From positions 33,290,977 through 33,354,738 of the forward strand of contig NC_069003.1 in the NCBI RefSeq assembly GCF_001194135.2: DNA of 63,762 nucleotides. Reading direction: 5' to 3'. The translations under genes and the position numbers were made by a program. The notes under the pieces were generated by a model. That model did no database searches. It was not told the DNA's origin and worked only from the letters and a program-made list of their open reading frames with translations. The DNA is from Octopus bimaculoides (Eukaryota). Positions 1,366 through 63,587 of this stretch are shown here, piece by piece; the first letter of the stretch is position 1; the number at the start of each line of letters is the position of its first letter.

Positions 1366-1526
1366 AAAAGGCAGTCTCATTGTAATGTTTGAAACTATAT
1401 TTGTCATTCCTGTGACAGACACTGGCAATCCAACCATAAATATCAATATAAGCATAATCATTGAAATACTGAATTCAACAAGCTCCAAGTCAATTTTGTC
1501 AATTACTAGCATATTGGAAGTTGAAC
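1366..1526 (+). CDS. Exon 1: C-terminal half of SEA domain
   Basis: ttcAG|A..GAA C|GTAAGT; [26 protein letters not shown]...SILEVE; GSLIV resembles the SEA GSVVV motif; phase 2 in, phase 1 out. Confidence 0.75.

Positions 1527-63587: not shown

What the first reader, a model, noticed from the sequence alone, without database searches (positions are those of the whole stretch)
1366..63587. Giant mosaic protein with an internal, apparently active serine protease between MAM and LDLa arrays
Seen: 48 phase-compatible exons encode SEA-mucin-LDLa-5xMAM-LDLa-SRCR-LDLa-SRCR-protease-LDLa-MAM-16xLDLa-(MAM?), and the protease exon ends in a splice donor, not a stop. Established: enteropeptidase, corin and TMPRSS proteins have SEA/LDLa/MAM/SRCR stems but a C-terminal protease; MALRD1 has MAM+LDLa arrays without a protease; Drosophila Nudel has an internal protease flanked by LDLa repeats. 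Inference: this is a protease fused to an LDL-receptor-like ligand-capture array of over 1,000 aa that stays peptide-linked after activation, i.e. a bind-and-cleave surface or matrix enzyme. I do not recognise this architecture from any named family.
Basis: partly seen in the sequence, partly recalled or inferred. Interest (0 to 1): 0.9.

Follow-up and report, generated by a model that had tools for sequence, protein, structure and literature searches.

The report
Giant octopus mosaic protease gene
The window holds most of one very large Octopus bimaculoides gene, currently annotated as three genes. Its serine-protease domain sits in the middle of the protein, and it belongs to an uncharacterised protease family found across molluscs, annelids and nemerteans.

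Summary

RNA reads prove the key junction: protease exon 31784 is spliced to the LDLa exon at 32251 (480 reads).

The interpretation needs three corrections.
1. In several RNA runs the transcript reads through the donor of the first array LDLa exon (35328). It then stops at once (GT-TAA). That protein ends protease-LDLa-MAM-LDLa, without the array.
2. A long form exists. Three runs carry about 5.4 kb transcript contigs that join that exon to the next LDLa (38652), and the array exons are spliced in series. The annotated model covering the array also has a Trypsin hit, so a second protease probably lies beyond the window. The array is then likely a stem, not a terminal capture tail.
3. The architecture is not unique. 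Protease-LDLa-MAM occurs in predicted proteins of octopus, bivalves, snails, a chiton, an annelid and a nemertean. An Argonauta model is colinear at 61% identity.

The protease has an intact catalytic triad but no Asp189. Its activation site is Tyr|Ile, and an aromatic residue there recurs in most family members compared.

The 662-N gap probably hides one LDLa exon.

Verdict: a real, misannotated gene and a new variant of a known kind.

The parts
1366..1526 (+). Exon encoding the C-terminal half of a SEA-like domain (..FRKG|[10 protein letters not shown]..). It enters in phase 2, so earlier exons (SEA N-terminal half and presumably the signal anchor) lie upstream of the window.
   Evidence: Splice sites and frame. 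The G|S[VIL] motif matches SEA-positive homologues. The half domain gives no Pfam hit.
2665..3695 (+). Mucin-like S/T-rich tandem-repeat exon, interrupted by assembly gap 3316-3465 (frame f2 before the gap, f1 after).
   Evidence: The RefSeq protein P0394 runs through the same repeats.
4961..4990 (+). 30-nt mini-exon ([10 protein letters not shown]), phase 1-1.
   Evidence: Present in P0394. Located.
5823..5993 (+). LDLa module a.
   Evidence: Pfam Ldl_recept_a, 30 bits.
7277..9191 (+). MAM1, three exons: 7277-7423, 7653-7833, 9022-9191.
   Evidence: Pfam MAM, 102 bits. Junctions.
9397..10651 (+). MAM2, two exons: 9397-9558, 10310-10651.
   Evidence: Pfam MAM, 68 bits.
11076..14120 (+). MAM3 (degenerate), three exons: 11076-11168, 12603-12781, 13874-14120. 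Gap 13639-13648 lies in its second intron.
   Evidence: Pfam MAM, 19 bits, below cutoff. The local MAM profile matches. Identical to P0394.
14647..15247 (+). MAM4, two exons: 14647-14808, 14924-15247.
   Evidence: Pfam MAM, 96 bits.
16173..19234 (+). MAM5, two exons: 16173-16331, 18902-19234.
   Evidence: Pfam MAM, 39 bits.
22338..22451 (+). LDLa module b.
   Evidence: Pfam, 29 bits.
22932..23740 (+). SRCR1, two exons: 22932-23085, 23574-23740.
   Evidence: Pfam SRCR, 63 bits.
24696..24821 (+). LDLa module c, ending at a GTAAGT donor. The RefSeq model XP_014778703.1 reads through this donor to a stop at 24850.
   Evidence: Pfam 18 bits, weak.
25288..25949 (.). 662-N assembly gap in the intron 24822-26399. 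It probably hides one 37-codon LDLa exon.
   Evidence: Argonauta P0395 and P0242 both carry an extra LDLa exactly at this junction. The exon is at L002 31035-31139. The flanking exons also join in phase without it.
26400..27639 (+). SRCR-like region before the protease, three exons: 26400-26523, 27032-27139, 27602-27639. P0001 starts at an internal Met at 26507.
   Evidence: Exons from P0001. No Pfam hit here. SRCR_2 scores 32 bits in homologue P0242.
27783..31784 (+). S1 protease domain, four exons: 27783-27957 (activation site SHY|IQYG, His57 in TAEHC), 29339-29601 (Asp102 in SDIALL), 30814-30944, 31625-31784 (GDSGGP). It ends at a GTAAG donor in phase 1.
   Evidence: Pfam Trypsin, 151 bits. 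Aligned to enteropeptidase 7wqx. X3 contig arithmetic: 394 nt = 263 + 131.
32251..32361 (+). LDLa-like module d, spliced directly to the protease exon.
   Evidence: Junction 31784>32251 carried by 480 reads and a contig. Pfam 15 bits, E 0.035.
32746..34108 (+). MAM6, two exons: 32746-32886, 33743-34108.
   Evidence: Pfam MAM, 59 bits. RNA loose ends and junction 34108>35206.
35206..35328 (+). First array LDLa exon (L1).
   Evidence: RNA contigs and reads.
35329..35333 (+). Isoform switch: donor GT followed at once by TAA. Read-through gives ..NQVPG-stop (short form). Splicing to 38652 gives the long form.
   Evidence: Read-through depth equals exon depth in X21-23 and X3. The spliced form is in X37/X38/X39 contigs. 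The context G|GTTAACTAACA is identical in Argonauta.
38652..38789 (+). LDLa L2.
   Evidence: Contig records 5269-5409 (X37) and 271-411 (X39).
43140..54574 (+). LDLa L3-L10: 43140-43274, 48627-48761, 49376-49507, 51536-51724, 52448-52594, 52784-52930, 53618-53764, 54407-54574.
   Evidence: Phase 1-1 exons. The X39 contig extends 270 nt = L3 + L4. The 996-nt contig has 797 nt upstream of 55740, matching L6-L10 = 798 nt. The L4>L5>L6 links were not seen directly.
55744..56217 (+). LDLa L11 plus a 120-aa S/T/P-rich linker in one exon.
   Evidence: RNA pieces and junction 56217>56421.
56421..61405 (+). LDLa L12-L16: 56421-56564, 57063-57209, 58789-58932, 60766-60918, 61274-61405.
   Evidence: Junction 56564>57063 and a loose end linking L13 to L14. 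L15 and L16 rest on sequence only.
63477..63587 (+). Candidate next exon ([36 protein letters not shown]), phase 1-1 with strong splice sites. Its identity is unknown and it is not verifiably MAM.
   Evidence: No RNA test was possible.

Best explanation
Window 1366-63587 is the middle of one Octopus bimaculoides gene that the current annotation splits into three models: XP_014778703.1-like 1432 aa, 'TMPRSS9' 545 aa, and a 1497-aa model.

Domain order. The gene encodes a mosaic protein that is probably type II membrane-anchored. The order is SEA, mucin stalk, LDLa, 5 MAM, LDLa, SRCR, LDLa (plus probably one more LDLa hidden in the 662-N gap), an SRCR-like domain, an S1 protease, LDLa, MAM, LDLa.

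Two mRNA classes arise at the donor of the last of those exons (35328).
- Reading through it meets TAA immediately. This gives a short protein whose protease carries only an LDLa-MAM-LDLa tail. This form dominates, at very high depth, in several RNA runs.
- Splicing it to 38652 adds 15 more LDLa modules and an S/T linker. The long form continues beyond the window, most likely to a second protease domain.

Protease. It is predicted to be active, with chymotrypsin/elastase-like rather than trypsin-like specificity. It is predicted to be activated by cleavage after Tyr (SHY|IQYG). After cleavage it would stay disulfide-tethered to the stem (Cys1-Cys122) and peptide-linked to the C-terminal modules.

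What is shown: the exon chain, the junctions, the two transcript ends, the domain identities and the family relationship.
What is inferred: membrane anchoring, catalytic activity and specificity, auto- or trans-activation at Tyr, the second protease, and any ligand-binding role of the LDLa/MAM modules.
For: Locus and models:
- Same-strand models with artificial ends: a read-through stop after an LDLa exon just before the 662-N gap, an internal-Met start inside the SRCR-like domain, and a start inside L2.
- Stop-free chain of 2624 codons with GT-AG at every boundary.

RNA:
- 31784>32251 carried by 480 reads.
- 34108>35206.
- A 5409-nt contig in X37 and X38 and a 5550-nt contig in X39 run from 4782 nt upstream of 33743, through L1, into L2 (and L3+L4 in X39).
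- Array junctions and linking loose ends for L10>L11>L12>L13>L14.
- Short form: coverage continues past 35328 at exon depth in X21-23 and X3. X21 has depth 0 over L11-L13. X40 has depth 343-363 upstream against 4-6 in L2 and the array.

Cross-species:
- The Argonauta hians model P0395 is colinear from MAM2 to L3 at 61% identity in one HSP, and its locus is syntenic.
- P0242, a 5.65-kb transcript contig from another organism, probably a cephalopod, is colinear from MAM3 to L5.
- The donor+stop context is conserved in Argonauta.
- The protease is 82% identical between the two octopods, the highest of the large domains.

Second protease:
- The 1497-aa model containing the array has a Trypsin hit.
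- Owenia and Tubulanus relatives have protease-LDLa/MAM-LDLa array-protease in single ORFs.

Protease features:
- Triad, oxyanion-hole Gly193/Asp194 and the canonical cysteines are present. Residue 189 is Pro. The alignment to enteropeptidase puts SHY|IQYG on ITPK|IVGG.
- P1 is Tyr or Phe at the activation site in most of the relatives compared.
Against: - No single molecule or contig spans the whole gene. The contigs are short-read assemblies, and the L4>L5>L6 links were not observed.
- Array contigs are 1.5-3 times deeper than the upstream contig in X37 and X39. Some array transcripts could therefore start independently.
- I could not read the second protease. The 1497-aa model never came back from the searches, so this point rests on one Pfam line plus analogy.
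- The N-terminus lies outside the window, so the membrane anchor is inferred from paralogues only.
- The weak modules (MAM3, LDLa_c, LDLa_d, the SRCR-like region, the SEA half) fall below Pfam cutoffs.
- Read-through RNA past 35328 could in principle be a stable retained intron rather than a polyadenylated short mRNA. No poly(A) site was mapped.
Confidence: 0.75

Rival explanations
1. Two or three separate tandem genes, as annotated. Gene A ends at the TAA after L1. Gene B (LDLa array plus protease) has its own promoter. The L1>L2 splice is then occasional read-through ('conjoined gene') transcription.
For: - The annotation has three models.
- In X21 and X40 the upstream part is expressed 60-fold or more above the array, or without it.
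- Array contigs are deeper than the upstream contig in X37 and X39.
Against: - In X37, X38 and X39 the main assembled path from the protease/MAM6 exons goes into L2, at the same depth (about 60) as L1. No other partner of the L2 acceptor was reported.
- L2 enters in phase 1 with no upstream Met or signal peptide.
- The model ends are read-through or internal-Met artefacts.
- The Argonauta model joins MAM..protease..L1-L3.
- P0242, Owenia and Tubulanus carry the same order in single ORFs.
Confidence: 0.12
2. One reading: the 16-LDLa array is the C-terminal, LDL-receptor-like ligand-capture tail of a single-protease enzyme, giving a bind-and-cleave surface or matrix enzyme.
For: The array is peptide-linked downstream of the protease in the long transcript. 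LDLa modules are Ca2+-dependent ligand binders in LDLR-family receptors (established knowledge).
Against: - The model containing the array also has Trypsin.
- Transcript contigs extend about 960 nt beyond L16.
- In relatives, LDLa arrays precede an SRCR_2 domain and a second protease, as LDLa stems do in corin and TTSPs.
- The dominant isoform in several runs lacks the array.
Confidence: 0.12
3. The internal protease domain is a non-catalytic pseudo-enzyme that serves as a scaffold or binding module.
For: - The activation site is unusual (Tyr|Ile-Gln-Tyr-Gly instead of Arg|Ile-Val-Gly-Gly).
- Pro stands at position 189 and TAEHC replaces TAAHC.
- Two cephalopod paralogues have damaged motifs: P0402 GDEGGP and P0306 VDSGGP.
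Against: - His57, Asp102, Ser195, Gly193, Asp194, Ile16 and all canonical disulfide cysteines are present.
- The same motifs are kept in Argonauta at 82% domain identity.
- Most of the relatives compared have an aromatic P1, which points to a real, shared activation chemistry.
Confidence: 0.1

Closest known systems
[quoted passage not shown]
   Same: Orthologue. It is colinear from MAM2 through the protease, LDLa, MAM6, L1, L2 and L3 at 61% identity in one alignment (protease 82%). It has the same Tyr|(I/V)Q(Y/F)G activation site, the same MPSCYGDSGGP motif and the same G|GTTAACTAACA donor+stop after L1.
   Different: It has one more LDLa between LDLa_c and the SRCR-like domain, at the position of the octopus 662-N gap. 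The model is partial at both ends, and the Argonauta locus is also split into several models.
Unnamed spiralian 'corin-like' family: O. vulgaris CAI9739445.1, Mizuhopecten XP_021346416.1, Mytilus VDH95306.1, Lymnaea CAL1546056.1, Sinanodonta KAL3889855.1, Liolophura XP_064597468.1
   Same: LDLa stem, SRCR-like domain, then an internal S1 protease followed directly by LDLa-MAM. The best matched stretch in each runs from the protease through LDLa-MAM to the next LDLa. The four members whose sequence I read have a non-basic P1 (Tyr in two, Met and Ser in the others) and a non-acidic residue 189. SEA was confirmed by Pfam in the O. vulgaris protein; mucin stretch and hydrophobic N-terminal anchor read by eye in O. 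vulgaris, Mizuhopecten, Mytilus and Lymnaea.
   Different: The four members I mapped (O. vulgaris, Mizuhopecten, Mytilus, Lymnaea) have three or four cysteine-rich Frizzled-type repeats (Pfam Fz confirmed for O. vulgaris only) instead of five N-terminal MAMs. Their tail is LDLa-MAM-LDLa-MAM-LDLa-LDLa-MAM(-LDLa), not a 16-LDLa array. They share about 30% identity with P0001, so they are paralogues or distant relatives.
Owenia fusiformis CAH1772368.1 (2620 aa) and Tubulanus polymorphus XP_074657056.1 (2259 aa)
   Same: One ORF carries protease-LDLa-MAM..., then an LDLa array (10 modules in Owenia; 4 and 7 in Tubulanus), then a further protease. In Owenia, Pfam finds an SRCR_2 domain between the array and the second protease. 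This is the arrangement inferred for the long octopus isoform.
   Different: They come from other phyla and share about 31-33% identity. The numbers of MAM, LDLa and protease modules differ, and Tubulanus has three proteases.
Drosophila Nudel (from established knowledge, not tested here beyond the Pfam DUF1986/'Nudel' hit)
   Same: A very large secreted mosaic protein with an internal S1 protease flanked by LDLa clusters, S/T-rich stretches and a second protease-like domain.
   Different: Nudel has no SEA, MAM or SRCR domains. Homology beyond the shared modules was not shown. DUF1986 scores only 26 bits inside the trypsin domain.
Enteropeptidase (TMPRSS15)
   Same: It is the nearest solved structure by sequence (7wqx, E 3e-32). 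It shares a SEA/LDLa/MAM/SRCR stem, the pro-peptide Cys and the 'SFGY' motif.
   Different: Enteropeptidase has CUB domains, a C-terminal protease, a Lys|Ile activation site and Asp189. None of these holds here.
Corin, MALRD1 and TMPRSS9/polyserase (the names given by automatic annotation)
   Same: Shared modules: LDLa plus SRCR plus protease with corin, MAM plus LDLa arrays with MALRD1, and several protease domains in one chain with polyserase.
   Different: There is no Frizzled domain in this gene (corin). MALRD1 has no protease. The polyserase domains are adjacent, without LDLa/MAM spacers, and are Arg-activated.

Membership tests
Spiralian corin-like family with an internal protease (unnamed, known only as predicted proteins) | S1 protease followed in the same ORF by LDLa then MAM | tested here: met
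   RNA junction 31784>32251. Long single matched stretches of P0001 on nine relatives, eight of them covering about query 4-544 and one about 62-498. Domain maps.
Spiralian corin-like family with an internal protease (unnamed, known only as predicted proteins) | LDLa module(s) plus an SRCR_2-like domain immediately before the protease | tested here: inconclusive
   LDLa_c scores 18 bits and the SRCR-like region has no Pfam hit in octopus. The homologous region of P0242 hits SRCR_2 at 32 bits. One LDLa is probably hidden in the gap.
Spiralian corin-like family with an internal protease (unnamed, known only as predicted proteins) | Non-basic, usually aromatic P1 at the activation site and a non-acidic residue 189 | tested here: met
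   SHY|IQYG and MPSCYGDSGGP. Most relatives compared show Y or F at P1, with M or S in some.
Type II transmembrane serine proteases (TTSP) | N-terminal signal anchor | not testable with these tools
   The 5' end lies upstream of the window; exon 1366 enters in phase 2. By eye, paralogues have a hydrophobic stretch near the N-terminus that looks like a signal anchor; this was not tested with a predictor.
Type II transmembrane serine proteases (TTSP) | Protease domain at the C-terminus | tested here: not met
   Both isoforms continue past the protease.
Type II transmembrane serine proteases (TTSP) | Arg/Lys|Ile-Val-Gly-Gly activation site with a disulfide tether | tested here: not met
   P1 is Tyr. 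The tether cysteines Cys1 and Cys122 are present.
Enteropeptidase | SEA-LDLa-CUB-MAM-CUB-LDLa-SRCR-protease order with Asp189 | tested here: not met
   No CUB hit in any piece. Residue 189 is Pro.
Corin | Frizzled cysteine-rich domains in the stem | tested here: not met
   No Fz hit in the window protein. Fz is present in the paralogue P0278.
[quoted passage not shown] | MAM plus LDLa arrays without a catalytic domain | tested here: not met
   Trypsin domain, 151 bits, in the same transcript.
Nudel | Internal active protease, a second protease-like domain and LDLa clusters. Orthology to Drosophila ndl. | tested here: inconclusive
   The architecture is analogous. The second protease is only inferred. 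No Nudel sequence was compared directly. Only DUF1986 at 26 bits.

The most novel reading that the evidence does not exclude
The conserved donor-plus-stop after L1 is a regulated switch. It makes the same Tyr-activated, chymotrypsin-like protease in one of two forms. One is an abundant stand-alone surface or mucus enzyme. The other is the first unit of a giant two-protease polypeptide, in which protease 1 activates protease 2 held in cis by the LDLa array. That would be a zymogen cascade built into one chain, ancestral to Spiralia.
Probability: 0.1. Interest if true: 0.7.

Novelty: new variant of a known kind. Interest (0 to 1): 0.42.

Why it matters
- It corrects the annotation of an O. bimaculoides locus, merging three models into one gene of roughly 3,500 codons, and predicts a missing exon in an assembly gap.
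- It draws attention to a mosaic protease family that is widespread in molluscs, annelids and nemerteans. Its catalytic domain is internal and its activation site is aromatic rather than basic.
- None of the textbook TTSP, corin or enteropeptidase rules (C-terminal protease, Arg/Lys activation) apply to this family, and I found no paper about it.
- The very high expression of the short form in some octopus tissues, and a switch conserved with Argonauta, make it a tractable entry point for studying what these enzymes do.
- It does not open a long-standing question and is not a new kind of system.

Tried and rejected
- Read laying was unreachable four times. As a result I could not lay reads across the 662-N gap, on the MAM array, on L3-L10, or on L15-L16 and the last exon.
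- I tried to settle the hidden-exon question by contig arithmetic. There are 3638 nt upstream of 26507, against 3369 nt of modelled exons back to the mucin exon. Both scenarios place the contig start inside the repeat exon, so this is undecided.
- The 1497-aa downstream model was never returned, so I did not inspect the second protease. Candidates P0342, P0297, P0287 and P0284 turned out to be unrelated multi-protease proteins.
- Protein search 16 found no close non-self relative of the protease-MAM6 region, and one search returned only generic LDLa-rich proteins. I first read that as lineage restriction. I rejected this after the exhaustive search and one search found Argonauta, cuttlefish and other relatives. 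The word-index search seems to miss or omit very long proteins.
- '(MAM?)' for exon 63477-63587 is not supported by Pfam or by a local MAM profile.
- The 'nudel' literature hits in mollusc papers were citations of an author named Nudelman.
- I did not attempt structure prediction. The permitted alignment would have been shallow and no conclusion depended on it.
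Full report
WHAT THE WINDOW IS
The window is eukaryotic, rich in microsatellites and has nine N runs. A 545-aa protein named 'transmembrane protease serine 9 [Octopus bimaculoides]' (P0001) matched my first crude join of the protease region at 97% identity. Its locus, on CM046623.1 of assembly GCA_001194135.2, is base-for-base identical to window 16507-45333, including the gaps.

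That record carries three same-strand gene models here:
- a 1432-aa model with LDLa, MAM and SRCR, ending at window 24850;
- P0001, covering 26507-35333;
- a 1497-aa model that starts at 38688, runs past the locus end, and has Pfam hits to Ldl_recept_a, Trypsin and (weakly) 'Nudel'/DUF1986.

THE OBSERVATION
Open reading-frame fragments on the + strand show LDLa, MAM, SRCR and trypsin motifs. I built the exon chain from splice sites and phases, by exact spliced alignment of P0001 and from RNA data.

The result is 48 coding pieces between 1366 and 63587, all AG...GT. The chain from 3467 to 63587 has 2624 codons and no stop. It is identical to RefSeq XP_014778703.1 (P0394) for 1145 residues, up to the point where that model reads through a GTAAGT donor at 24822.

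Pfam results:
- MAM1, 2, 4, 5 and 6 are confirmed. MAM3 is below cutoff.
- Three stem LDLa modules are found, one of them weak.
- SRCR1 and Trypsin (151 bits) are confirmed.
- A weak LDLa follows the protease.
- The array has 16 LDLa stretches.
- The SEA piece is only the C-terminal half of the domain (FRKG|SLIV) and gets no hit.
- The second 'SRCR' gets no hit in octopus, but its homologue in P0242 hits SRCR_2.
- The final exon, 63477-63587, is not recognisable as MAM.

THE GAPS
- Gap 3316-3465 lies inside the S/T-repeat exon. The coding frame is f2 before it and f1 after it, so the 150-N placeholder is not the true length and the repeat number is unknown.
- Gaps 4312-4468, 13639-48, 32660-78, 39471-80, 51004-51224 and 58502-35 fall in introns. 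The junctions over 32660-78 and 58502-35 are seen in RNA.
- Gap 25288-25949 lies in the intron between LDLa_c (donor 24821|GTAAGT) and the SRCR-like exon (acceptor at 26400). These two exons join in phase 1. However, Argonauta hians and a second, probably cephalopod, transcript both have an additional 37-residue LDLa module at exactly this junction. The corresponding exon is visible in the gap-free Argonauta locus. An LDLa exon is therefore probably hidden in the gap.

RNA EVIDENCE
Junction 31784>32251 (GT..AG) is carried by 250+230 reads from 115 start points in raw RNA run X21 and by a 1394-nt contig in X3. Exon depth is about 300 per orientation and intron depth at most 9. The refutation condition 'transcripts end after the protease exon' therefore fails.

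Junction 34108>35206 is equally solid.

At the next donor the picture splits. Exon L1 is 35206-35328, the donor GT is 35329-30, and TAA follows at 35331-33.
- In X21, X22, X23 and X3, coverage continues past the donor at exon depth, and the main X3 contig runs on to 35427. X21 has depth 0 over L11-L13.
- In X40 the upstream exons have depth 343-363 and a read-through contig 317, against 4-6 for L2 and the array.
- In X37 and X38, by contrast, a 5409-nt contig maps as record 4783-5148 = 33743-34108, 5149-5271 = 35206-35328 and 5269-5409 = 38649-38789.
- In X39 a 5550-nt contig does the same and goes 270 nt further, which is exactly L3 + L4.
- The spliced reading ..NQVP|EGICGK.. is in frame.

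Within the array, junctions 54574>55744, 56217>56421, 56564>57063 and 57209>58789 are supported by contigs or by loose-end sequences that I located in the window. A 996-nt contig has 797 nt upstream of 55740, matching L6-L10 at 798 nt. A 1674-nt contig continues 1392 nt beyond 57211, which is about 960 nt past L16.

The L4>L5>L6 links and L15-L16 were not observed directly.

INTERPRETATION OF THE TRANSCRIPTS
This is one transcription unit with two 3' outcomes.
- The short product ends ..[11 protein letters not shown]. It carries protease-LDLa-MAM-LDLa and is by far the more abundant in several runs.
- The long product adds 15 LDLa modules, a 120-aa S/T/P linker and more sequence beyond the window.

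The donor context G|GTTAACTAACA, with the stop directly after GT, is identical in Argonauta. This argues that the short ending is a conserved feature and not noise.

The annotated model that contains the array also contains a Trypsin domain. I could not retrieve its sequence, so the second protease is inferred.

THE PROTEASE
The closest solved structure by sequence is human enteropeptidase (7wqx, E 3e-32). That alignment shows:
- His57 (TAEHC), Asp102 (SDIALL), Ser195, Gly193 and Asp194 (GDSGGP);
- the pro-peptide Cys and Cys122;
- the 42-58, 136-201, 168-182 and 191-220 cysteine pairs.

Residue 189 is Pro, so the enzyme is not trypsin-like. The activation site aligns as SHY|IQYG against ITPK|IVGG. 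An aromatic P1 (Tyr or Phe, sometimes Met or Ser) and a non-acidic residue 189 recur in most relatives compared.

From this I infer an active enzyme with chymotrypsin/elastase-like preference. It could be activated by itself, by a paralogue or by another enzyme of similar specificity. After cleavage the catalytic domain would stay disulfide-linked to the stem and peptide-linked to the C-terminal modules. None of this has been tested biochemically.

RELATIVES
An exhaustive HMMER search with P0001 found proteins in which one long matched stretch covers most of P0001, from the protease through LDLa-MAM to the next LDLa. By name they are:
- Octopus vulgaris 'atrial natriuretic peptide-converting enzyme-like' (1733 aa);
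- Mytilus 'corin';
- Mizuhopecten, Sinanodonta, Lymnaea and Liolophura proteins;
- Owenia (annelid, 2620 aa) and Tubulanus (nemertean, 2259 aa).

Domain maps made with profiles built from this gene's own modules, plus Pfam, show two patterns. The O. vulgaris, Mizuhopecten, Mytilus and Lymnaea proteins that I mapped have a hydrophobic N-terminal anchor (read by eye), SEA, a mucin stretch, cysteine-rich Frizzled-type repeats (Pfam Fz and SEA confirmed for O. vulgaris), LDLa, then protease-LDLa-MAM-LDLa-MAM-LDLa-LDLa-MAM. Owenia and Tubulanus have protease-...-LDLa array-protease.

The third word-index search returned the Argonauta hians model P0395. It aligns with my chain in one HSP from MAM2 to L3 at 61% identity. 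Per-domain identity is protease 82%, L2 77% and L3 83%.

P0242, a 5.65-kb transcript contig from another organism, probably a cephalopod, is colinear from MAM3 to L5 at 42% identity.

Cephalopods also have paralogues with a C-terminal and partly degenerate protease (P0306, P0402).

Literature searches found no paper on this family. [quoted passage not shown]

VERDICT
The internal protease is proven at the RNA level.

Three things change the interpretation:
- the array is absent from the dominant isoform in several runs;
- the array is probably the stem of a second protease;
- the architecture already exists in many predicted spiralian proteins.

I file it as a new variant of a known kind, the mosaic S1 proteases of the TTSP / Nudel / polyserase type. 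It is a member of an uncharacterised spiralian family. It fails the TTSP, enteropeptidase, corin and MALRD1 definitions on features I tested.

Interest is moderate. It is useful for annotation and for protease evolution, and it comes with a neat conserved isoform switch and an unusual activation site. It is not a new kind of system.

Noticed in passing
window 8196-8423 (+), in the intron between MAM1 exons: Fragment of a reverse transcriptase ORF (Pfam RVT_1, 28 bits, just under cutoff). It is a retroelement relic in the same orientation as the gene.
   Followed up: partly
window 47281-47649 (+), in the intron between L3 and L4: A 123-aa ORF that hits Pfam DUF7083 (27.8 bits). Probably another mobile-element remnant.
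   Followed up: partly
window 6852-6951, 19674-19976, 26796-26915, 28492-28572 (+): A short interspersed repeat recurs in several introns. Its translations look alike (..FLTP(V/T)T(L/P)QSV(L/V)GAF.V(A/S)P..). It gives no Pfam hit and looks like a SINE-type element.
   Followed up: partly
window 888-1109 and 15481-15636 (+): Another repeated element (..GGEPCCTL(P/S)[21 protein letters not shown]..) occurs upstream of exon 1366 and in an intron.
   Followed up: no
window 38550-39400: In run X21, which lacks the long isoform, this stretch (L2 exon plus downstream intron) has continuous coverage of about 100-250 per orientation that is not exon-shaped. 70% of the reads are only 95-99% alike, and very deep repeat peaks sit at 39160-39390. 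This is probably repeat-derived transcription mapping here, but it is unexplained.
   Followed up: no
L002 (Argonauta) 60311-61306: About ten tandem copies, spaced some 80-150 nt apart, of a fragment matching only the first 14-16 positions of the LDLa profile, just upstream of the L4-equivalent exon. This looks like an intronic tandem repeat derived from half an LDLa exon.
   Followed up: no
window 55933>57234: An apparent 'joint' with non-canonical ends (AT..CT plus CTCC) appears at depth about 400 in X37 and X39. It lies in low-complexity TCC-rich sequence, and I take it for an assembly or alignment artefact rather than a splice.
   Followed up: partly
protein searches: The word-index protein search returned no hit longer than about 1,900 aa. 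It missed the window's own 1497-aa model and full-length LRP-type proteins. Absence of long relatives in that tool is therefore not evidence of absence.
   Followed up: partly
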